Source: Anthoceros angustus (lineage: Eukaryota > Plantae > Anthocerotophyta). From it: a stretch of 64,000 nt of DNA. The position numbers were made by a program, and so were the translations under genes. Positions within the stretch are counted from its first letter, which is position 1. Each line of letters begins with the position of its first letter. Shown here one piece after another: positions 46,609-63,691 of the stretch. The DNA is taken from the NCBI GenBank assembly GCA_010909165.1, contig VJWM01000204.1, positions 124,001 through 188,000 of the forward strand, in the 5' to 3' direction. The notes under the pieces are model-generated. The model was given only the letters and a program-made list of their open reading frames with translations, was not told the DNA's origin and did not search any database.

Positions 46609-47813
46609 TTATCCTACAAGCAGCTTGTTCTCCTCCAAAAATGAATAGGGTGGGACTTCAAGGTTGTAAGGAGCAGGTCCCTTGCGAACACGTCCAGATG
46701 TGTCATAGTGAGATCCGTGGCATGGACAAAACCATCCATGATAGTCACCGGCATTGGGCAGAGGCACACATCCAAGGTGCGTGCAGACACCGACCACCAC
46801 CAACCATTCAGGCTTCTGGACTCTCACTTCATCAGGTTGTGGGTCGCGCAACTCGTTCAAGTTGACATTCAAAGCAGCCTTGATGTCTTCTTCAGAGCGT
46901 CTTCGGATGAAGACCGGTTTTCCCCGCCACTTCACTGTGACTGTGGCACCTTTCTCAATGTTGGTCAGATCAACCTCCAATGAAGCCATAGCCAGGACAT
47001 CCTTACTTGCTGACATGCTTAGGATCAGCTTCAAAACCAAAAGCCGAAGTGCAGAGGCATAGGCGAATCTCCCTCCAGTAAGAAGAAAGTAAGTGAAAGC
47101 TTTCTTGCTCGGGTCCCCTGGCGCAAACCTCTCATGCACGTGTTCATCATACGTTATGGCATGAGTTGGGTTCTTCATGGCTGCCACAGTAGGAGACAGG
47201 CCATCTAGATCACCCTTGGCACTCAAGGCATCCGATGCAAACCCTGCCATCGAACCAAAACACTGTTACTTTGGGTCCTCCAACAAAACCACGACCAGGC
47301 AGGACGAAACACAAGCTCCTAGATATCCTTAAATACTGCAACCTCTGCGGCACTATCATGGTCCACTGCAAGCTGGTGAGTTAGACAACACTAATGACTT
47401 CACACGATCTACTAGACCTCGACCTGACTCCGCCTAGCAATTGGACTCCAGCAGACAACCCTGGCAGCCTACGACATCGAGCTACCGTAACTTTGGTCAT
47501 GATAGCGCTACTTTGGCTATGAGCAACGGACGAGGTACGTTAGCGGTGCTCCATGCTGCAACAAGGAGGGCGGATCTTTTGACGAAAAGCTGTCACAAGC
47601 ATTCCTGAGAGAAATACCTCGAGAAAAAGAAGGATTCCAAGCAGCCAGAATGGCAGCCACACCATCACTTCGGCCGTCCTCAGAAACCCTGTCGTCCAAC
47701 GATCCAATCCCTAGAGAGGAAACCCGCGTTACGCCCGACGAGGAGAGGGAGGGAGAGCAGGAGCCAGCCAAGCGCGCCAGCGACGGAAGCGCGCGCCCTA
47801 CCCCCCTCATCAT
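46609..47813 (-). CDS. Mitochondrial cytochrome bc1 Rieske iron-sulfur subunit (exons 47813-47618, 47243-46609)
   Basis: Presequence, then [27 protein letters not shown] and [12 protein letters not shown] (Rieske boxes). The phase-1 intron joins correctly. Confidence 0.96.
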
Positions 47814-48499: not shown

Positions 48500-48905
48500 T
48501 TTGCAGCGGTGCATGAGCGTGGTGCGGTGCGGCGTGGTGCGGGGCGTGGGCTGTGCGGGGACCCGGAGGCGGTCAGGAGGCGCGTGGAGCTATGCGAGGC
48601 GGAGGCGGAGGCGGAGGCGGTGCGGGAATGCGAAGCGTGTGCCAGGAGTGCGGTGTGCCAAGGGCTAGGAGCGCGGAGCAGTGCGGGAGTGCGAAGCGTG
48701 TGCCAGGGGCCAGGAGCGCGGAGTGGTGCGGGAGTGCGAGGCGTGTGCAGTGCAGTGTGCGGGGACCCCGGAGGCGGAGGCGTGCGGAGTGCGGAGCGTG
48801 TGCAGAGTGCGGTGTGCGGGGACCCGGAGGCGGAGGCGGAGTGGTGCGGAGCATGTGCCACGAGTATGGTGTGCCAGGGGCAAGGAGCGCGGTGTGCCAG
48901 GAGCC
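48500..48905. repeat. GC-rich degenerate minisatellite abutting the RT fragment
   Basis: Recurrent gtgcggggacccggaggcggaggcg and gtgtgccaggggccaggagcgcg units. Confidence 0.8.
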
Positions 48906-50410
48906 AAGAGTGAAGCGTGGCGGGCTGCGCCTAGGGTGCACCCTATTGCCGTCAGGGAGGCGTTCTTGCGCCTCATAAGCCACAGCACTGTCATTCAACT
49001 CCGGGAGCAGTTGCAGGCGCACCTTTGCCCCCATCAATTTGGGATTGCCACTCCGGGGAGCTGTGAGTCAGCGGCCTTTGGAGTCGAGGCGGTTCTGGAG
49101 TCTCATCCGGATTGGGTAGCCCTGCAAGTGGACGTTGAGAACGCTTTCAACACAGTCTCTAGGACGGCTATTTTTACGGAGCTCAAGAATGCGGGCGCAC
49201 AGCTGCCAAGTCTTATTCTATTTGTCCACTTTTTCTATGGTTCTCCGTCTAACCTCTACTTTCAGCCTAGGCCATATACGGAAGGGGTTTTCGTGCTTGA
49301 CTAGGCGACAGGCACGAGACAAGGGGAGCCCTCTTCACCGTGGCGTACTTCAGGGCGGTATGCACTACTGCCTCTGCGCTCAAGAAGTGTCTCTTTCCGT
49401 CCGTGGTGGATGACACTCATAATATTATCTTAGGACCGGGGGACAAGGTCAGGGAGGCATTCGAACTCTTCTCCTCGAAGCTATCTCGCCTGGGCTTGAG
49501 GGACAAGCTCCTCAAGTGCAAGGTTTAGTCCCCGTCGGACATCGCTCCCTCTCTTCAATATCCTAGGGGGAAAATTGTTTCCGCATAGGGACTTCGCATC
49601 TTGGGGGTACCGATGGGACCCCCGGACTCTATTTTGCGTTTTGGCGATGCTACTTTTGACTTGGTCCACGTTAGCGACCTCTCTTAGTTAGGGGACCCTC
49701 AGGGGGCATTTGGCATCCTTTCTTCCTGCTTCGTGCATCGACCAGGGTACCTCACTAGAACGGTCGCTCTCTCCCCTGTTTTTCTATTAAGCTTGGGGAA
49801 GTTTGATAAACAGGTTATGCAGATGCATGAGGACATACACCTTCGAGTGTGCCGCAAGGGGTTGGCGAGGCGGTAAGCGTCCCTACCTGTCGCCTTTGGG
49901 GGCACTAGTCTACTGGCTATGGAGGCCTTAGCACCGGTGGCCTTCCTTAGGAGCTGGGCCCTCTCTACCCCCGTCTTGGCCTCTCGGTTCTTAATCTGAG
50001 ATTCCCCCATCTTGGAGGCCTTCGTCTCAGGTGTTGAGAAAAGAGGCCTTCCCCTTGCAGGTTTTCTCAAGGTTGGCTAGGGATTCCATCCTCGGAGGCC
50101 ACGGCAGCCATGCCTCTTTTTTCCACGCTCTCGGTGGACAGGCTGCATGGCCTTCAGGCCTTTCTCCCAGAGAAGCAGTTCGGATAGGTGCAAAGGGCCT
50201 TTCTTCTGGATTCTACTATTTCTCAACGTGCTCGAGCTCCCCCCCGCTCTTGCTCGGGGAAGGCAGTGGGCCCCTGGCTTCTAATTCGGCCATGCATCTA
50301 AGCTTTCCGAATCGCACCATCCTCTTTTTCTATCGCGATGAGTTTCCACTTGGGCTTGGTCCATCCTTAAGCCTGTTCTCTATCATCTTGCAATTGTGGG
50401 ACCCTCCTTG
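48905..50410 (+). mobile_element. Decayed CRE-clade-like non-LTR retrotransposon reverse transcriptase
   Basis: HPIAVRE..LRL, PHQFGI..PGSCE, HPDWVALQVDVENAFNTVSR, TGTRQGEP, SVVDDTH, and downstream GPWLLIRP...F..HLGL.HP followed by CNCG. Many stops and frameshifts. The clade call rests on recalled CRE motifs. Confidence 0.75.
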
Positions 50411-53706: not shown

Positions 53707-56445
53707 GAAACACTCTGAATGTTGGGTCATCTTCGACGGGCAATTGGTGAGGTTATGCGTGAAGCTCCATTCCTGTAGTTTGGAGTGCACATTTCCAGTG
53801 GCAGTACAAATTTCTGAAAAGTGTCTACCCCCATGATAGGATTTTGGTTGTGAGTGTCCTCTGTGAGCCGTTGTAGACTTGACATAGTTAATATCTTCCA
53901 ATGTTCAAGAGTTTTTCCATTACATTCGGAAGGACATGTGGGGAGTGTGGCCGTAGGGCCGCGCTCGACATTGCGGCATAATGAAAGGCAACACACGATG
54001 AGTCGTACGGGCATGTTTTTATGTGCGACATGTCGGCGGGAACTAGTTGCCGCACACTTTTTTAAGTTCATCGATTGCAGTCTGGGGGACTGAAGCATGT
54101 GATTATATTTGCGGGCTCAATTGAGACTGTGCGGAAGCCATGCCCCCACCCCAATCCTAAAGTCTATTTGTAAACAAATCGCACTAAAGGCCTGCTACTC
54201 TCCGCTATTCGCAATGCATCATCGCAATGCCGAGAGGGGCAGCGGCGCGCCTCCTCTCGACACCTTTGCTACCTGCGGCGGGTCACTGTCATCCAAATCT
54301 GATCACCGTTCTTTTTTGGAGTTTTCAGTGTTGTTGAACGAGAAAGACAGGCAGTTACCGGCAGCAATGGCCCTTGTCATGGGTCTTAAATCTGCCCCAA
54401 ATGAGGTTAACTCTTACACCATAACCCTTCGCGGGCATGAAATGGATCTTAAATCACTGGTTTATACGAATTGTCACCCTTCTTTTCTGCCTTAAATTGA
54501 CCCATACCCCAAAAACCACGAGTTCAATACCCATGTGAAACCCCCTTCAGAAGATATATGTCACAAAACCCTCTTCGTGAATATTCACCCCCTTCGCAAG
54601 ATATCGTGTTCCCCTTTCTAAACAGACGCTGTTAGTGATATTAGGGGTCATAGTCAACAAAGTTGACATTCGTCAAGCTTGTTGTCTAAGGTTTTGAGGA
54701 AATTACTCAACTTCATTATTTCCTCTTATTTGATTTTATCTGAAGTTATCACAAAAAACAAAATTGGGTCGTTCCTCGTAAAAACCTATTATGTTCAAGA
54801 AGCTGTAAAAGTCAAATCTTATGCCACCAATGTTACGCACCACTAGGTCAGCTTGTTGATTTATGAGGACAACAAAGAGGATCTCTTTTTAGGGTGAACC
54901 AAAACCGGATGTTGATAAAACCATCACGGGTTCTATCAACCATCTTGATAAATCTATTATCTTTTATCTTCAACATCATTTGACTTTTTCTTCACGTGAA
55001 TTCGGAGACGATATTTTAGAGTATACTTCGAAGTCCCGCACTATGATTTTGATCTAGAGTAACCCTGAAGGGCATTAACAATCGGCGGCCCCCTCATTGC
55101 GGAGACGGGAACAAGGATTTTGATATGGAGTAACCCTGTAGGATACTAACAACTGGTGGCCTCGCACACTCCGAAGACGAGGGCATGATATTTATAAGAT
55201 GTGGCCTTGTAAGGCCATGAAGTTGGTTGGGTGGCACCCATCCAAGCACTGATGGGTCCGAAAGATGCTTAAGTATGGAGTTCCAATGAACTCATGTCTG
55301 GTTATCATTCCTTGAAGGGGGATGCAATGTTCAACTTTTAATAACTAACTCTCAGTACAGCGGGCTACAAGCGGGCCACCTCTTTATCCCGCTCACTCTC
55401 AAAATGTATGGGGCCATGGCCGAGTCAAGTCCTGTGCCAAATCCTACCACTCCCGTAGGCACAGCTCGGGCCTGTCCCTTTCTTACTTTACAGCTTACTT
55501 CCGACCACGCGTCTCCATCGCCCTTCATAGGGCCCTTTCAACGGCGATTCTCCACAAGGCGGCAATTGTAGGTGATGCTTCTTCCTCATCCTCTATGGTT
55601 TGCAAGCCCTTTGTTCTTCCTGCTTATGACGTTTTGGGAGCAGTAGGTACTCTTAGGTAAGGAGCTTAGATGCTCCTTTTCACCTTGACCCTTGTATCCT
55701 TTTTGGTTGTCCCCTACTAGATGGTCTTCTTGCCATCGTTTTTATCCTAAATAAAATACACTCTCTTTTAACAACTTGAGTTTATCTCTTCTCTATTTAT
55801 TTAATAAATAGAATCCAATTAACTATAAATAAATTAAGTTTATCTTATCTCTCTTTATTTAATTAATTAAATTTATGTATTAAAGTAAGATAGCTACCTA
55901 ATATGTCCCTTGATTTAGGTTTATCCAATAAGGCCTCGTACTCCAAATATACCTATGAGGTATCATCTTAAATTTTGTATGCAATTGTTTAGTTACTTAA
56001 AAGAATACTTAAGACTTATTAAATCATCTAGTTATTACCTAATGAACTTGTGAATATAGAGTTCAAGAGGTTGCTAATGAAGCAAGGACCTCAAGAAAGG
56101 TTTACTACATATATCAAAGTGATAGGGATCTTCCCTCTCTTCTATTTATGCAAATACCTTTCTTCAATTTTCTCTTCCATTCATGCAAAGTCAAATAGTT
56201 TATAAATGAAAGTGAATTGACATTCAAAATTTGTTGTTATACATACACCTTTTTGGTAAAGATATCATAAGTTCTTTCTTATCAAGCAGTTATGCCAACT
56301 TATGCAGATTTTGAAAGGTCTTACATTGAATTGAGCATATGTGGTCACAAAAAATTTTATAATGTATTTTTTGGAGACTGCTTAGATTTGTCTATTATGG
56401 TTTAAAAGAGAAAATTATTTATATTCATAAACTACATCAAGAAAT

Positions 56446-59011
56446 ATGGAGCAAGCAGTTGAAGCTGTCTCGATAGTTGGAGCAGTAGCACAAGCTATTG
56501 CTGGCATGGACTTAGGTGATGGAAGGTTAGGGGAGGAAGCACAAGGACTAGAGCAAGCTGCCATTGGACTTGGAACATTAGGACAACTTGACCAAGCTGT
56601 GCTTGACACCAGAGAAATTTTAAACGAATTAATGGATGGTGACCCTAATTATGACCCCACTGGACATTCACAAAGAAGTATACTTGTTGCAAGTCAACCA
56701 ATTGAAGAAACGTTACAAGTTATCACAGACAAAGCACATGACATTCTTGCCATTGTTGAGGCTGAGCTAGATGCCCTCAATGCAGCGCAGGTGATAACTT
56801 TTTCAAATGAAAGTAGCATATTGAATTTCTTTCGGCGATAACATAGCCTATGTTTTGTGGTCGCAAATTGCTGCATTAAAATAACGGATGTATAGATGCT
56901 TCCAGAAAGCGCTGGATATTAGTAGGACAAAAGCATTTCAAGATGGAGATGCACTTACAAGTAGAAGCATGGATGAAGATTTACTAGCCTGTAAAGAAGT
57001 AAGTAAGTTTTCAGACAATCATGTTAACATATTGATAACGATTTTTTCACACTTTGGGATAATTGAGAAATGTGGTGTGATACTTTTAGTTGCAAGACAT
57101 GCATAAAAAATATCGCAACCTTTACGATAGAGAACGAACTTTCCATCAAAACAGCGAAGCTATTATGCGACTTCAAAATGCATTGTTATGTAATCTTAGA
57201 GGTGACAACAGGGTTGTACAACAAAAACTAGACGAATATTGGCATGTGGTGAGCATAATTCAAATAATATATTAGGATCTCTTAAAATAAAATTAAAATA
57301 TTGAAATATTTTTTCCATGTGCTCTGTAGGATTATGCCCCTGAAATCGCTCGATTACAAGAGCAAGCAAATAAATTTACAAAGATGATTGAAGTTGAATC
57401 AAAAAAGTTGAACGATTTGGAATCAACTATTGAACAATTTGCTGCCAAAGAGTTAGCCGCAATGACAGCTATGGGAGGCCGATATGCTGCTAGAGATATG
57501 GCTTATCATACTTGCATTATGATTAAGATATTGGAGAATCGGGTTGAAAAGGTTTAAAGGTCTTATCCCAACTTTGGAATTCCACCTTTTTGAGGGTTTT
57601 ACACATGTGCAAAATCATATTTGCATATTGACATAAAACTGGATGTTAGACGTGTCATTATACCAAGTACTCTATGTGATGTAGAATTTTTATTTTCTTC
57701 TAGGCTAATTATGATCTTAATATGGTGAATTCTCATAATAAAGCCCTTAAACAAGAAATGAAAAAGTTGCATTTTGAGCAAGGAATTTATGATAGTATAC
57801 AATCCAAAATGGAAAGGGACATGGAGTCAAACAAAAAAGAAACAAATAAATATTTAGAATGGTGCAATTGCATGTATGAAGAGAGGCATGAAATTCAAAG
57901 AATAATTTCAGGTTTGTAGAGATTAGTAAGACGAGTTAAAGTTTGTAAGGATAGTATATCTATCAATCTCTAAATTATTTTTGAGAAAAAAATCAATATT
58001 AAACTTTACCTAACATACATGATCATTGAATGGCTGTTTTTAGAGTTGTTGGAAATGGAGGAATGTGAGCGAGCTTATTATCGATGGCAAAACACAGGAG
58101 GATGGTCACACGCTGATGCAAGTCCTCTTCAAGAAACAATTCGTAGAAAGGTACCTTTTTTACTTCAACCAATATTATGAAAGTCAGAATGATAAGGTTA
58201 TTAAGATGCATATTCCCTTTGAGAAGAGATACAATGCATAACACCCACCCATTCATGAAACACTTGAGATTTTTTTTCCTACAGGATCCGGAAGATGAAG
58301 CAGCCTTGGCGAGTCAATATGAAACACCTACTACTGTGAGGTTTAGGCTTTTGATTGAATATAAGGCTTTCCATAAAACACAACATTTACTACGTGTAAG
58401 GAGCATCAAAGGTGTTCTTCCTGCTCTTATACAAGCTCGTGAAAGAAATGCTCAACTTTACGCTAATCTACTTCAACTCTCCCAGGTGCCTTTCATGTCT
58501 TATTTTCCAAAAATTAGAAAGTATATTTTATGATGTATTTTATAAGTTGAAAACATTGTTAATGCATATGTAGGCCATAGCGGAGGAAGAAGCCGAGCTT
58601 GAAGCAATGGCAAGAGCGCGTGCTGGCCTAGTTGGTACACCTGGAGAGCAAGAAATGATGGATCTCTTAAATTTGATTGCATCATGTGGTCTTAGTGACG
58701 AGGAACTACTACCCATCATTAAGGAGCTTCAAAAAGGAATCACAATCACTTTCCGAGATGCTGGTATGCAATTGATTGATTTAAGTTACGTTTCCTTGGA
58801 GTAAGAAATGTCCATCTAGAGTTTTGTTTTTAACTTTTTCTTTTGATTGCTTTGGAATTGCTTAGGGCTGGATTATGAAGAAGAGGAACCGGATCCATAT
58901 CATCCGGAAGTGGAGGAAGAAGCTTTTGTTCAATCTTTGGAGATGGCCATTGCCAAGTTATTCGGTTGTATTGAAAATTTCATTGACAAACTTTCAGGGG
59001 TTTTAAGTTAA
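56446..59011 (+). CDS. Divergent coiled-coil protein resembling outer-dynein-arm docking complex DC2 (ODAD1/CCDC114/CCDC63 family); 9 exons, AT-rich
   Basis: Exons 56446-56790, 56906-56998, 57090-57248, 57330-57551, 57704-57911, 58044-58150, 58285-58485, 58574-58763 and 58866-59011 splice GT-AG into one open frame. IKILENRVEKANYDLNMVNSHNKALKQEMKKLHFEQGIYDSIQSKMERDM parallels the recalled DC2 IRILENRLEKA..K.N.....NK.LR..I..LR.E...F..I...LEREL. Confidence 0.65.
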
Positions 59012-59719
59012 TCAAATATATGTATATTAATTATAGAATTTTAAAAAGATCTAGATATTAGAGGGAAGGAACAGAAGTCTACTTAGAAGCCTAACTAGGT
59101 ATATGCTTGGAGCCTTGATGATTAGACGGGTCCATATAGCATATTGTAATATTGTAACATAACCAGAAAGAGCTAGAAGATACAAGCATGCCTCCTACCT
59201 ACTACGGAGCACAACAACAAGCTCTTTGTAATTTAAACATTGAATTAATTAATTGACAAACTTGTACATTCTGGAAGCCCAAGTATGTGCAAAAAAGCGA
59301 CGCCAAGAAGCGAGCAGCACATGCTGCCATGGTAGCGATAGCCGGAGGATTTGTGGCTCGTTTCTTGGCGCCGCTGTGTCAGTGTAGGCCGGGTAATGTG
59401 GCTTGTCCATTCCTTGGAGATAAATAGCGGCTCATCTTCTGGCCAGATTGTGCTCTAATATTTCTCTGAGCACATTGGTACGTGCTCCGACCTTGTTTTG
59501 CATTTTGCTTACATAGCTGGTATTCCTTGTGCCTGGCTTCCTTGACGAGTCTCCAGGTTTTCACGCTGTCTGTGTACGTCACGGATCTCGGAGTGTGCTG
59601 CCCACTGCAGATTCTGAACAGGAATCAGTGTCCCCGCAGCTATGCCTACTTCTGAAGGTTATTGCAAAATTGAAAGAGCTTCGTAGATGGTTCGTTGCTG
59701 GGCTAAGAGGTTTGCCAGA

Positions 59720-61165
59720 ATGCAAGGGGTCATGGCAATGGCTACAGAGTGGTCTGCTGTCCCTTCAATATCCTCGAGGACTTGCCCAGAGAAGGGTGCA
59801 GATGGCCGCCGAACCAGGCTGTCTCGCTCTCTCCACGTGCGGCACCCGGCTCTGCACGCCAACAGGTGTGAGCATTGGGGTTCGCGGTTTCATGGCTCAA
59901 AGGCATCGGCAGCTGGCAGTCTGTGCATTCTGGACATAGCAGCAGAACTAGCCAGTGAAAGCCGTTTGCAGAGGGTGGTGTGGGAAGCACCGCAGTGTGG
60001 AATTCCTCTGACCATCGTGGAGGCCGTCACCGAGGAGGAGCTGAAGGCAGCTGCGTACTTGCGAGCACGAACTTTCTACACTTACCCGCAGGACAGATCT
60101 CCGGATGCTATCAAAGTATGTGCGTTTCGTTTTTGTGGAGGAGTAATTTTTGCCAGCACTCTCGAGTAGCATGCCTAGAGAGTACTGTCAATGACGATGG
60201 ATTGGGCCTGCAGCTGATGATATCAAGATACTTGCAGTCTTTTGTGCTTGGATTGACTGCACAACATTGTGGATAGGCCCACAGACAAATGAAGGCCCAA
60301 GATGACTGGCGAGCATTAGTCACAAAGGTGAATGGGTTTGATGATTCATATGGACGGGTTGTTTGCCTGATTGCTATGTGCCACCAGTCCAGCCTCGACC
60401 TTGACAATGAGAGTGATCTATTAACGTCATGTAAGGTGGGCTGTGTTTATAGGTTTTGCTGTGGACACACACAGACTCTGTCTTCAGTGTCTTTGTGAGC
60501 ACAAGTTTTTTCTCATCAAACCATTGTTCACAAATATGTCCTTCGACATGCATGCAGGTGGGGCCGAACAGCTTTGTGGTAGGGAGCCTTGATCTGAATC
60601 AAGGGATTCGGCTGCCAGGTGAAATCACAGGGGATTATCCTGTTGTAAGTTACCTGGCCTTCCTTCACATTGCCTGGAAGTCACTGCCACTTGTTGAGCG
60701 CAGCTGTAACACTCAGACTTGTTTACAGGGTCCCGACGCTGCGACTCAGCGAGGCTACTTGTCCAACGTTTGTGTAGCAGAAGAAGTGCGCCGAAAAGGT
60801 GTTGCAACAGGGCTGATAGAATCTGCTCGAAAGACTGCTGGACAGTGGGGTAATTTCTCTCGATCACATCCTCTCAGACCTTGGTGTCCATTGCAGAAAA
60901 AATTAGGATGGATCTTGAAAACGCTGTGTCAACTTCTTGTGATGTTGCAGGGATCACGGACCTGTACGTGCATGTTGTATTTGACAACGTGTCTGCGCAA
61001 AATCTATATGCAAAAGCTGGGTTCGAGTTTGAGAAAGAAGAGAACTCTTCAGCCACACGATGGGAAGCTCGTCCCCGAAGACTCCTACTACACTCAGATC
61101 TCCGGATCGTGGGCGATCAGACCGACACTGAACCTGAAGATGTTCTTGGTTCTGTAACATGTTAG
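59720..61165 (+). CDS. Plastid-type GNAT acetyltransferase; multi-exon
   Basis: AAAYLRARTFY, VVGSLDLNQG, RGYLSNVCVAEEVRRKGVA (acetyl-CoA motif), ITDLYVHV..DN..A..LY.K.GF and RPRRLLL. Confidence 0.85.
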
Positions 61166-61826: not shown

Positions 61827-63691
61827 TCATGACGTTGGAGTCCTCTCATTGCTGTCAGCGACTATACTTCTGCTACAGAAGCATGAATAGACAGGATGAT
61901 CCCTTTTGGACACAAACTTGGAGGTTGAACCAGTCAGAACTGGGGATGATGATGACATGGTTGTCTTCATAGTAGGCACGATGATATTTGTTCTGCCCAC
62001 TGCAATACGCTCTCCAGCTAAAGTCGAATACATCATACCCGGAATAGCTGGGATAAACACATCACTTTCTGTACATACTATCAAATCAACAGCAAGCTCC
62101 AGCTGTGTTGTGCCGGTGAGCAGAAATTGATTCTCCTCATTGAAGGGCATACTGTATTCCTGCGGGAGATAGCAGCAGCATGTGAGAAGACAGCCACACC
62201 GGGGGTGAGAGGTCAGTGATATAAATAGGACTAAGGGGAGTGCTTGCAGGAGGAGGCACAGGGGACAAACCTTTGTGTGCATATTTGGGAACATCTCTAG
62301 TAAAGGATCAAGCATGTCATTCCACTGAGAATTTGTGAGATATATAGCGGTATTCCGGTCGAATCCCAAGTTCTGCAACAGAAGCCCAACCTCCACAGGA
62401 GAGAGACACTTCTTCTTCCTCACTTTCCGAGAGTCAAGGTCAGAAGCTCCAAAACTAGTGTTACACTCTCTGCGCTGTAGTGCATCCAGGCGAAGGTCCA
62501 CAGCGACGAAGTGTCCACCGAACTCTGCACCAGCTTCCTTGATGCGACTGACGACCCTCTCCCCTAACTTTTGCACCGGGAAGGAGAACCGCAAAGAGTG
62601 AAACATTACTAAGCAGCGTACCGCTTGCATAGCCCTATCCTCAACCTGCTGAAACCCTAACGCTGTGGTGAAACCTCTGATAACAATAAGCTGGCGCCGC
62701 TCCAGCATGGGCCTCAGATTCTCGTCAATGTACTCAGGCGTCACCCTGACGGGAACTTTGGTAAAGCTGTCCTTGGTAATATTGAGGGTGGCGGGAAGGC
62801 GGCCAACCACCCGAACGACGCCCTCCAGGGCAGCAATGAAATGTCGTACGCTGTATATATCCTCGAACTTACTGCAAGTCAGGCCACACACAACAAATCT
62901 CAGCCTGGCGGAACTCAAAGTGAGTGCTGGCTGCTCCGAGAGAAAAATGTATTCCAAACTCCACATACCCGCCAGGTTCTTGCAAACCCTCTTTCACAAT
63001 GGGGATCACCAAGGTGGCATTCAACTGGATAGCCACCACCACTGCATCCGCGACCTGCAGGCTTTTATCAAAACTACTCCGATGCCTCCCTCAAGAGACC
63101 GTGCCACAACGCACCAAAGGCAGCAGAAACAAAGCGGTGCTGACAAGCTACCTGCAACTTATGGTTGTGAGGCCCATTCGAGATCTTGACAACAACAAAA
63201 CCCCGGTTTCCAGCAGGCCTCGCCTTCTCTGCGGATCAATGCAAACGCCGACTCAGAATCTGAACCCCAGCCACGCATGGCAGCTCCAACACAGAGTGTT
63301 TCACACACTTACGCTGGATCCGATCGCTCCAACACGGCTCCAGCGCGGGAGCCAGGCCAGCCGAGAAAAGCGTGGTCATGTTTATCCTGCTGGCGGAAGG
63401 CACATCGGCCGCCACATCCTCGGACCGCGAGTTCCACCAATCCGCCGCGGCACCGAGCCTGTCCCTAATCTACACAACCGCAGCCGGCAGAGTGACCACA
63501 TATGGAACCCGAGTCCGGAAGCAGAAGGCGGGAAAAACAGAAACAGTAGGCGCACCAACCTCGGGCTTCTGGTACGCGAACTGCCCGAACGAGACGTTGC
63601 TGGCCATGTTGAGAAGAAGAACTAGGAGTCCTAAAGCCAGGAGAATCCCCATGGCCACCTTCAAGTCCGCCATGGCCGACCGCTTACTCAT
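61827..63691 (-). CDS. O-fucosyltransferase-family (GT106-like) type II membrane protein; multi-exon
   Basis: N-terminal TM (GILLALGLLVLLL), SKFEDIYSV.HFI, LRFS..V..LG, GHFVAVDLR, LSPVEVGLLL..LGF..NT.IYL and AVDLIVCTESDVFIP. Confidence 0.88.

What the first reader, a model, noticed from the sequence alone, without database searches (positions are those of the whole stretch)
56446..59011. Intact but highly divergent outer-dynein-arm docking-complex (DC2/CCDC114-like) gene in a plant lineage thought to lack outer arms
Seen: nine small AT-rich exons, invisible as one ORF, splice with canonical GT-AG and consistent phases into a continuous coiled-coil protein. Segments parallel recalled Chlamydomonas DC2 in order: IKILENRVEKA...HNKALK...IQSKMERD, then LPALIQARERNAQLYANLLQLSQAIAEEE (cf. 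LVNTFLAAEDQNYTLFNYVNEVNQEIEKLE), then IKELQKGITITFRDAG (cf. TALKAGINDLFERIGC). Established: DC2/ODAD1 docks outer dynein arms, and sperm of seed-free land plants generally lack outer arms. Inference: the docking subunit was kept after loss of its cargo and repurposed, or this lineage retains vestigial ODA machinery. The gene is visibly far more AT-rich than its neighbours and sits against a TE island, suggesting fast evolution or a silenced, sperm-specific domain.
Basis: partly seen in the sequence, partly recalled or inferred. Interest (0 to 1): 0.8.

Follow-up and report, generated by a model that had tools for sequence, protein, structure and literature searches.

The report
Docking-complex gene kept without outer arms
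A land plant (probably a hornwort) whose sperm should have no outer dynein arms keeps an intact, strongly conserved gene for the coiled-coil protein that normally anchors those arms, so the anchor probably does another job in plant sperm flagella.

Summary
Window 56446-59011 (+) carries nine GT-AG exons that read as one 556-codon frame.

- **Conservation:** a second, related species has all nine exons with the same splice sites. DNA similarity stops at the exon borders, and pN is 0.077 against pS 0.78.
- **Family:** exon 5 alone passes Pfam's cut-off for ODAD1_CC. Exons 3-5 and 7 match Chlamydomonas DC2 and a Tetrahymena docking protein in the right order. No other axonemal coiled-coil chain scored in these searches.
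- **Orthologues:** Selaginella (UniProt D8RYC7/D8RBA4, named automatically) shares all six intron positions compared. Unidentified plant contigs in environmental assemblies share at least three splice borders.
- **Background:** published surveys find no outer-arm heavy chains in any land plant.

So this is a conserved land-plant branch of the DC2/ODAD1 family, kept after its cargo was lost. It is not fast-evolving within hornworts. Its function is inferred only, and no RNA data were available. The tail half is too diverged for a significant match.

I found no paper describing these plant genes, but Hodges 2012 was not readable. Other first-reader notes of this scan report docking-complex-like genes elsewhere in this genome; I did not check them.

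The parts
56446..56790 (+). Exon 1 (115 codons). ATG start. Glycine-rich N-terminal extension that is not coiled-coil-like and was not found in Selaginella or the third lineage.
   Evidence: First ATG after an in-frame stop. Donor is GTGATA. 74-88% amino-acid identity in L001, pN/pS about 0.11-0.37. No Pfam hit.
56906..56998 (+). Exon 2 (31 codons)
   Evidence: AG acceptor and GTAAGT donor. 90% amino-acid identity in L001.
57090..57248 (+). Exon 3 (53 codons). Carries the LQDMHKKYRNL... motif that opens the DC2-family coiled coil.
   Evidence: 94% identity in L001. Aligns with Selaginella P0007 residues 9-60 and with the third lineage. The clade profile aligns this region to Tetrahymena 7moq_Z from residue 10.
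57330..57551 (+). Exon 4 (74 codons). Coiled coil with the MGG break, ending in ILENRVEK.
   Evidence: Best PDB match is Chlamydomonas DC2 residues 73-141. 95% identity in L001. Same exon borders in L004 and Selaginella.
57704..57911 (+). Exon 5 (69 codons plus 1 base). The best-conserved core of the ODAD1_CC domain.
   Evidence: Pfam PF21773, 3.9e-9, 36.4 bits against a cut-off of 27, profile positions 19-79. PDB: 7moq_Z 2e-4 and DC2 residues 147-203 at 1.2e-3.
58044..58150 (+). Exon 6 (2 bases plus 35 codons)
   Evidence: 91% identity in L001. Aligns with Selaginella VLEMHGDMEAYKMWEASKGW. An equivalent exon is seen in L004.
58285..58485 (+). Exon 7 (67 codons). Carries the KAF...VLPAL..ARE.NAQL motif.
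   Evidence: A four-sequence profile has DC2 residues 302-341 as its top PDB match, E 0.34. 91% identity in L001 and 44% in the third lineage.
58574..58763 (+). Exon 8 (63 codons plus 1 base). Carries the IIKELQKGITITFRDAG motif.
   Evidence: The motif is conserved in L001, L004 and Selaginella. No PDB match.
58866..59011 (+). Exon 9 (2 bases, 47 codons and the TAA stop)
   Evidence: The SLEMAIAKLF..IE.FID motif is conserved in L001 and L004. The stop codon is at 59009-59011.

Best explanation
This is a real, intact gene under purifying selection. [quoted passage not shown] It belongs to a branch of that family found in several land-plant lineages: hornwort-like plants, the lycophyte Selaginella, and a third unidentified lineage.

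Shown here: the exon model, selection on it, family membership of the N-terminal about 220 residues, and shared intron positions among plant lineages.

Inferred: land plants have no outer-arm heavy chains, and in Chlamydomonas the docking complex assembles on doublets without arms. The protein therefore most likely still lies along the A-tubule (the A07/A08 cleft) of sperm axonemes as a filamentous 24-nm coiled coil. It would probably be paired with a DC1/ODAD3-like partner. There it would stabilise or pattern the doublet, or dock something other than an outer arm. The tail half, which in algae and ciliates becomes ordered only when dynein binds, is the most diverged part.

The 0.6 below is for the whole statement. 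I put the gene and its family at about 0.9, and an axonemal role independent of outer arms at about 0.4.
For: Gene model:
- GT-AG at all eight introns and a single open frame.
- The orthologous contig L001 has the same nine exons and splice sites.
- blastn similarity is confined to exons.
- pN is 0.077 against pS 0.78 over 517 codons.

Family:
- Exon 5 matches ODAD1_CC at 36.4 bits against a cut-off of 27.
- Exon 4 matches DC2 residues 73-141 and exon 5 residues 147-203.
- The clade profile matches 7moq_Z at 1.6e-9 and DC2 at 9.4e-4. No DC1, ODAD3, MIA or CCDC39/40 chain appears at E<=10.
- The exon 7 profile has DC2 residues 302-341 as its top match.
- By language-model features, the Selaginella orthologue is nearest to ODAD1_CC clusters, both whole and as its tail half.

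Plant clade:
- Selaginella P0007 aligns in order with E3-E8, carries ODAD1_CC at 46 bits and shares all six compared intron positions.
- The third lineage (L002-L005) has E3-E9 equivalents; the borders before E3 and E7 and on both sides of E4 and E5 are splice-like.

Background from papers:
- No outer-arm heavy chains in any land plant (PMC9237703).
- The docking complex assembles on doublets without arms (PMC2136212).
- The CCDC114/151 coiled coil sits in the A07/A08 cleft, and the C termini of DC1/DC2 become ordered only with dynein bound (PMC8595878).
Against: - No transcript evidence. No RNA run holding the stretch was listed, and the one run laid covered nothing.
- Only the first about 80 of 287 ODAD1_CC positions match significantly. 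Tail-half profiles find no DC2 chain at significant E.
- Orthology to DC2 itself, as opposed to an old paralogue, was not tested by a tree. No full-length canonical sequences could be obtained.
- Absence of outer-arm genes from this genome rests on papers, not on a search here.
- A DC1/ODAD3-like partner is known only from an unchecked first-reader note.
- Localisation and function are untested.
Confidence: 0.6

Rival explanations
1. The plant clade descends from an old DC2 paralogue whose job never was, or no longer is, on the doublet. Candidates are a cytoplasmic or proximal dynein-assembly factor like Chlamydomonas ODA5/ODA10, now serving inner arms. Another is a component of the basal-body or multilayered-structure apparatus of plant sperm.
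For: ODA1, ODA3, ODA5 and ODA10 are paralogous coiled-coil proteins, and ODA1 has duplicated several times independently (PMC3842995). Mouse CCDC63 is needed for spermiogenesis (PMC4632774, title only). The plant tail half is not significantly DC2-like. Hornworts add an N-terminal extension of about 146 residues (E1-E2) that was not found in Selaginella or the third lineage.
Against: Among solved chains, only DC2-type chains match; DC1/ODAD3 chains do not. ODA5 is reported as a recent duplication within chlorophyte algae, and ODA10 orthologues are reported absent from Physcomitrella (PMC3842995).
Confidence: 0.2
2. The lineage keeps working or vestigial outer-arm machinery, and this protein still docks it.
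For: Other first-reader notes in this genome report further docking-complex-like genes (s1-258143, s1-324787; unchecked). One preprint labels 'outer dynein arms' on moss sperm TEM (bioRxiv 10.1101/728691). Chara and Klebsormidium keep beta and gamma outer-arm sequences without visible arms (PMC9237703).
Against: No outer-arm heavy-chain sequences were found in any land plant surveyed, hornworts included (PMC9237703). [quoted passage not shown] ODA8, ODA16-type and C11orf70 factors are reported lost from Selaginella and Physcomitrella (PMC4361367; bioRxiv 10.1101/211953).
Confidence: 0.05
3. The match is generic coiled-coil resemblance, and the gene encodes an unrelated coiled-coil protein.
For: The protein is rich in E, L, A, Q and K. 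Foldseek on the orthologue's model returns only generic coiled coils. Word searches were swamped by coiled-coil candidates.
Against: One 69-residue exon passes Pfam's curated cut-off. Three separate exon queries and a profile pick the same DC2-type chains, in order, out of 177,635 PDB sequences. Other coiled-coil families rank far lower in the Atlas, at 0.80-0.84.
Confidence: 0.03
4. It is a decaying relic with no function.
For: It has low GC and is absent from the listed RNA data.
Against: The frame is intact here, in L001 and in Selaginella. pN/pS is about 0.1 with synonymous sites saturated. Splice sites are conserved.
Confidence: 0.02

Closest known systems
Chlamydomonas reinhardtii DC2 (ODA1), docking-complex subunit; PDB 6u42/7kzm/7kzo/8glv
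   Same: Matches in order: exon 4 to residues 73-141, exon 5 to 147-203, exon 7 to 302-341. Similar length (556 against 552 residues). Both have the MGG break before the ILENR.EKA motif.
   Different: About 30-35% identity even in the best block. The tail half has no significant match. There is an extra N-terminal extension of about 146 residues. The host lacks the outer arm that DC2 docks (from papers).
Tetrahymena outer-dynein-arm docking-complex protein (PDB 7moq chain Z)
   Same: Best PDB match to the plant-clade profile, 1.6e-9 over chain residues 10-220. The match includes the N-terminal KKYR.LE-type motif.
   Different: It belongs to a trimeric docking complex carrying a three-headed outer arm. 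No cargo is known in plants.
Animal ODAD1/CCDC114 and CCDC63 (PDB 9fqr, 9e5c; Pfam PF21773)
   Same: Same Pfam family. Weak matches to exon 5, E 0.26-0.8.
   Different: In mammals it is part of a five-subunit complex with ODAD2, ODAD3, ODAD4 and calaxin (PMC8595878). Whether plants keep any of these was not tested here.
Selaginella moellendorffii SELMODRAFT_416187 / 409385 (UniProt D8RYC7, D8RBA4), uncharacterised
   Same: Orthologue. Aligns in order with E3-E8, shares all six compared intron positions and carries ODAD1_CC at 46 bits.
   Different: 430-457 residues, without the hornwort E1-E2 extension. About 35% identity.

Membership tests
DC2/ODAD1 (Pfam PF21773 ODAD1_CC) sequence family | Match to the ODAD1_CC profile above Pfam's gathering score | tested here: met
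   Exon 5 alone scores 36.4 bits against a cut-off of 27. The Selaginella orthologue scores 46-47 bits. Only profile positions 3-86 of 287 are covered.
DC2/ODAD1 (Pfam PF21773 ODAD1_CC) sequence family | Similarity in the same order along the protein, not just one coiled-coil block | tested here: met
   E3-E6 profile matches 7moq_Z residues 10-220. E4 matches DC2 73-141, E5 matches 147-203 and E7 matches 302-341 as top hit at E 0.34. E8 and E9 gave no match.
DC2/ODAD1 (Pfam PF21773 ODAD1_CC) sequence family | Closer to DC2 than to the paralogues DC1/ODAD3, ODA10 and ODA5 in a tree or by reciprocal best hit | tested here: inconclusive
   Only DC2-type chains appear among PDB matches at E<=10, although DC1/ODAD3 chains are in the same entries. 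No tree was built, because no full-length canonical sequences could be fetched.
Outer-dynein-arm docking complex (functional system) | Heterodimeric coiled coil with DC1/ODAD3 | not tested
   A CCDC151/ODAD3-like gene in this genome is known only from an unchecked note (s1-258143).
Outer-dynein-arm docking complex (functional system) | 24-nm repeat in the A07/A08 cleft of the doublet | not testable with these tools
   Needs localisation or cryo-ET. The AlphaFold2 model of the orthologue shows long helices at residues 3-108 and 113-211, but mean pLDDT is only 55.
Outer-dynein-arm docking complex (functional system) | Docks an outer dynein arm | not testable with these tools
   Papers report no outer-arm heavy chains in land plants (PMC9237703). 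The rest of this genome could not be searched here. If that holds, this defining function cannot apply, so I file the gene under the sequence family and not under the functional system.

The most novel reading that the evidence does not exclude
Land-plant sperm axonemes keep a DC2-type (perhaps DC1/DC2-type) filament on the outer face of the A-tubule although the outer arms are gone. On this reading the docking complex has a function of its own. It might stiffen or pattern the doublets of the very long, coiled plant sperm flagella. It might instead dock a plant-specific structure through its remodelled tail half and, in hornworts, its new N-terminal extension.
Probability: 0.35. Interest if true: 0.7.

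Novelty: new variant of a known kind. Interest (0 to 1): 0.5.

Why it matters
Docking-complex proteins are studied almost only as anchors for outer dynein arms, and their loss causes primary ciliary dyskinesia in people. A lineage that lost the arms hundreds of millions of years ago has kept the anchor under strong selection. That makes it a natural experiment on whether the anchor has an arm-independent role on the doublet microtubule.

The plant clade includes, or is close to, organisms that can be transformed (mosses, Marchantia, Anthoceros), so the question can be tested by knock-out, tagging and cryo-ET.

It also refines the published picture that land plants have 'no outer arm sequences'. 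That holds for the motor chains but apparently not for the docking subunit. In addition, the gene appears to be missing, at its full length, from the 15-billion-protein collection searched here, so it may be unannotated in this genome.

Tried and rejected
- **Joined protein not searched.** All searches were exon by exon, by reference. Not done as a result: a whole-protein HMM or HHpred-type search, folding of the hornwort protein, and an exact look-up of its annotation. In one search I concatenated the exons inside a script and wrote the translation to a scratch file. This was only to check frame, stop and composition, and the file was never searched with or reused.
- **Word-index protein searches.** The three searches returned only the Selaginella protein and the exon fragment P0001.
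- **Exhaustive exon 5 search.** It gave seven hits at E<=0.001. One, P0002, is a TPR-repeat false positive.
- **RNA evidence.** No RNA run holding the stretch was listed. The single run offered laid nothing. This gives no verdict on expression.
- **Tail-half profiles.** A4 and A7 found no DC2 chain. Alignments A1 and A6 were discarded because MAFFT stacked the exon fragments on each other.
- **Structure.** The AlphaFold2 model of the Selaginella orthologue has mean pLDDT 55. Foldseek returned only generic coiled coils such as SMC, F-BAR and chemoreceptors. This is uninformative.
- **Literature.** Hodges et al. [quoted passage not shown] It may already tabulate docking-complex genes.
- **Earlier findings by sequence.** The look-up was blank.
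- **Considered and rejected.** The pseudogene and generic coiled-coil readings (see rivals).

Full report
**1. The observation**

Reading 56000-59500 and the three forward frames gives nine exons on the + strand. The borders are listed under parts. Every intron starts with GT and ends with AG. Phases fit: two introns are in phase 1 and the rest in phase 0. A frame check inside a script gave 1671 nt, 556 codons and one terminal stop.

That script joined the exons only for this check. Everything below was done exon by exon, by reference.

The gene is strikingly AT-rich. Exons are 29-47% GC, introns 22-35%, and GC3 is 0.29. Nine neighbouring ORFs have GC3 of 0.50-0.71.

The window is land-plant DNA. 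It holds a PPR protein with an E motif, an LRR receptor kinase, a GH3 enzyme, a P-type ATPase and an O-fucosyltransferase. Earlier notes of this scan call the genome hornwort-like. I did not test that.

**2. Is the gene real?**

No RNA run holding the stretch was listed, and the one run offered covered nothing. The junctions therefore have no transcript support. Comparative evidence takes its place.

- An exhaustive search with exon 5 found a 96-residue fragment that is 91% identical (P0001). Its 7.4-kb contig, L001 from a 2025 sequencing run, carries all nine exons in order.
- DNA similarity to the window starts and stops at the predicted exon borders. The introns are unalignable.
- The same GT and AG sites and phases are present in L001.
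- Amino-acid identity per exon is 81-95% for E1-E8 and 61% for E9.
- Over 517 aligned codons, pN is 0.077 and pS is 0.78, so synonymous sites are saturated.

This is strong purifying selection, not fast evolution. The orthologue has the same low GC3 of 0.29, so the AT-richness is a stable property of the gene.

**3. What family?**

- Exon 5 alone (69 residues) matches Pfam ODAD1_CC at 3.9e-9 and 36.4 bits, above the curated cut-off of 27.
- Against all PDB sequences, exon 5's best matches are a Tetrahymena docking-complex protein (7moq_Z, 2e-4) and Chlamydomonas DC2 (1.2e-3, residues 147-203). CCDC63 and another ODAD1-domain chain follow.
- Exon 4's best match is DC2 residues 73-141.
- A profile of the plant sequences over E3-E6 matches 7moq_Z at 1.6e-9 (residues 10-220) and DC2 at 9.4e-4.
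- No DC1, ODAD3, MIA or CCDC39/40 chain appears at E<=10, although such chains are in the same PDB entries.
- A four-sequence profile of exon 7 has DC2 residues 302-341 as its top match out of 177,635 sequences.
- Profiles of the exon 8 region and of the whole tail half find no DC2 chain.
- By language-model features, the Selaginella orthologue is nearest to ODAD1_CC clusters. This holds for the whole protein (66 of 100 hits, 0.96) and for its tail half alone (71 of 100, 0.94). I treat this as a lead only.

Conclusion: this is a diverged but full-length relative of DC2/ODAD1. Statistical support covers roughly the first 220 residues of DC2.

**4. A land-plant clade**

- The one full-length hit of the exon 5 search is Selaginella moellendorffii EFJ22880 (UniProt D8RYC7). 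UniProt names it automatically as an 'ODAD1 central coiled coil region domain-containing protein'. A second copy or allele is EFJ30763.
- The Selaginella protein aligns in order with E3-E8 of the window (3.6e-23 for E3-E4).
- Mapping it on its own locus shows that all six introns between E3 and E9 lie at the same alignment positions as in the window.
- A third lineage appears on an ENA scaffold (L002) and on three JGI metagenome contigs up to 108 kb long (L003-L005). It has equivalents of E3 to E9. In L004 the borders before E3 and E7 and on both sides of E4 and E5 are splice-like and match the window's. Its organism is unknown.
- The hornwort E1-E2 extension of about 146 residues was not found in the other two lineages.

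**5. Background from papers**

- Lucas and Geisler 2022 found no outer-arm heavy chains in any land plant, hornworts included. They found dynein-2 and DHC12 only in hornworts and a liverwort (PMC9237703). This agrees with the classic absence of outer arms in electron micrographs.
- ODA8, ODA16-type, C11orf70 and ODA10 factors are reported missing from Selaginella and/or Physcomitrella (PMC4361367, bioRxiv 10.1101/211953, PMC3842995).
- Table S1 of Desai et al. 2015 lists the best DC2 BLAST hits as 2e-4 in Selaginella and 5e-10 in Physcomitrella. The text copy does not keep the colour coding that says whether these counted as orthologues.
- No paper in the searchable library discusses a DC2-like gene in land plants. 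Hodges et al. 2012 is not held.

**6. How it most likely works (inference)**

- In Chlamydomonas the docking complex assembles on doublets without arms. It is visible as a small projection in armless mutants (PMC2136212).
- In cryo-EM structures the DC2/ODAD1-DC1/ODAD3 coiled coil lies in the A07/A08 cleft with a 24-nm repeat. The C termini of DC1 and DC2 become ordered only when dynein binds (PMC8595878).
- The plant clade keeps the front, coiled-coil part best and has diverged most in the tail.

The simplest reading is that the filament stayed on the doublet after the arms were lost and now serves another purpose there. A paralogue with a different or cytoplasmic role is the main rival. A vestigial outer arm, chance coiled-coil similarity, and a dead gene are all unlikely.

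**7. Verdict**

I class the gene as a new variant of a known kind and give it moderate interest of 0.5.

Other first readers noted docking-complex-like genes elsewhere in this genome (s1-258143, s1-324787). These are unchecked and could include the partner subunit.

Noticed in passing
window 56446-59011; L001 828-3468: GC3 is 0.29 in this gene and in its orthologue, against 0.50-0.71 in neighbouring genes. Another first-reader note (s1-380371) places the axonemal p28/DNALI1 gene of this genome in an AT-rich island too. Sperm-axoneme genes may share a low-GC signature here.
   Followed up: partly
L003, L004, L005 (JGI metagenome contigs Ga0209208_10012433, Ga0209611_10000065, Ga0116227_10000470) and L002 (ENA ERZ12293045): Plant nuclear DNA sits inside environmental assemblies, on contigs up to 108 kb. 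It carries a third-lineage orthologue; the borders before E3 and E7 and around E4 and E5 are splice-like and match the window's. The organism was not identified.
   Followed up: partly
window 48681-49304 (+): A weak reverse-transcriptase-like ORF (RVT_1, 24 bits, below the cut-off). It lies next to G-rich 45-nt direct repeats at 48592-48742.
   Followed up: no
window 46609-47250 (-): An ORF with Rieske 2Fe-2S and UCR_TM domains, which looks like a mitochondrial cytochrome bc1 Rieske subunit.
   Followed up: no
window 60456-61157 (+) and 61827-62966 (-): A GNAT acetyltransferase-like ORF and a GDP-fucose protein O-fucosyltransferase ORF lie downstream of the gene.
   Followed up: no
window 56446-56998 (exons 1-2): An N-terminal extension of about 146 residues with a strongly conserved DGDPNYDPTGHSQRSILVA stretch. 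It has no Pfam match and no counterpart in Selaginella or the third lineage.
   Followed up: partly
literature: bioRxiv 10.1101/728691: TEM legends for Physcomitrella sperm label 'outer dynein arms', although land plants have no outer-arm heavy chains. These could be docking-complex-type projections. This is speculation.
   Followed up: no
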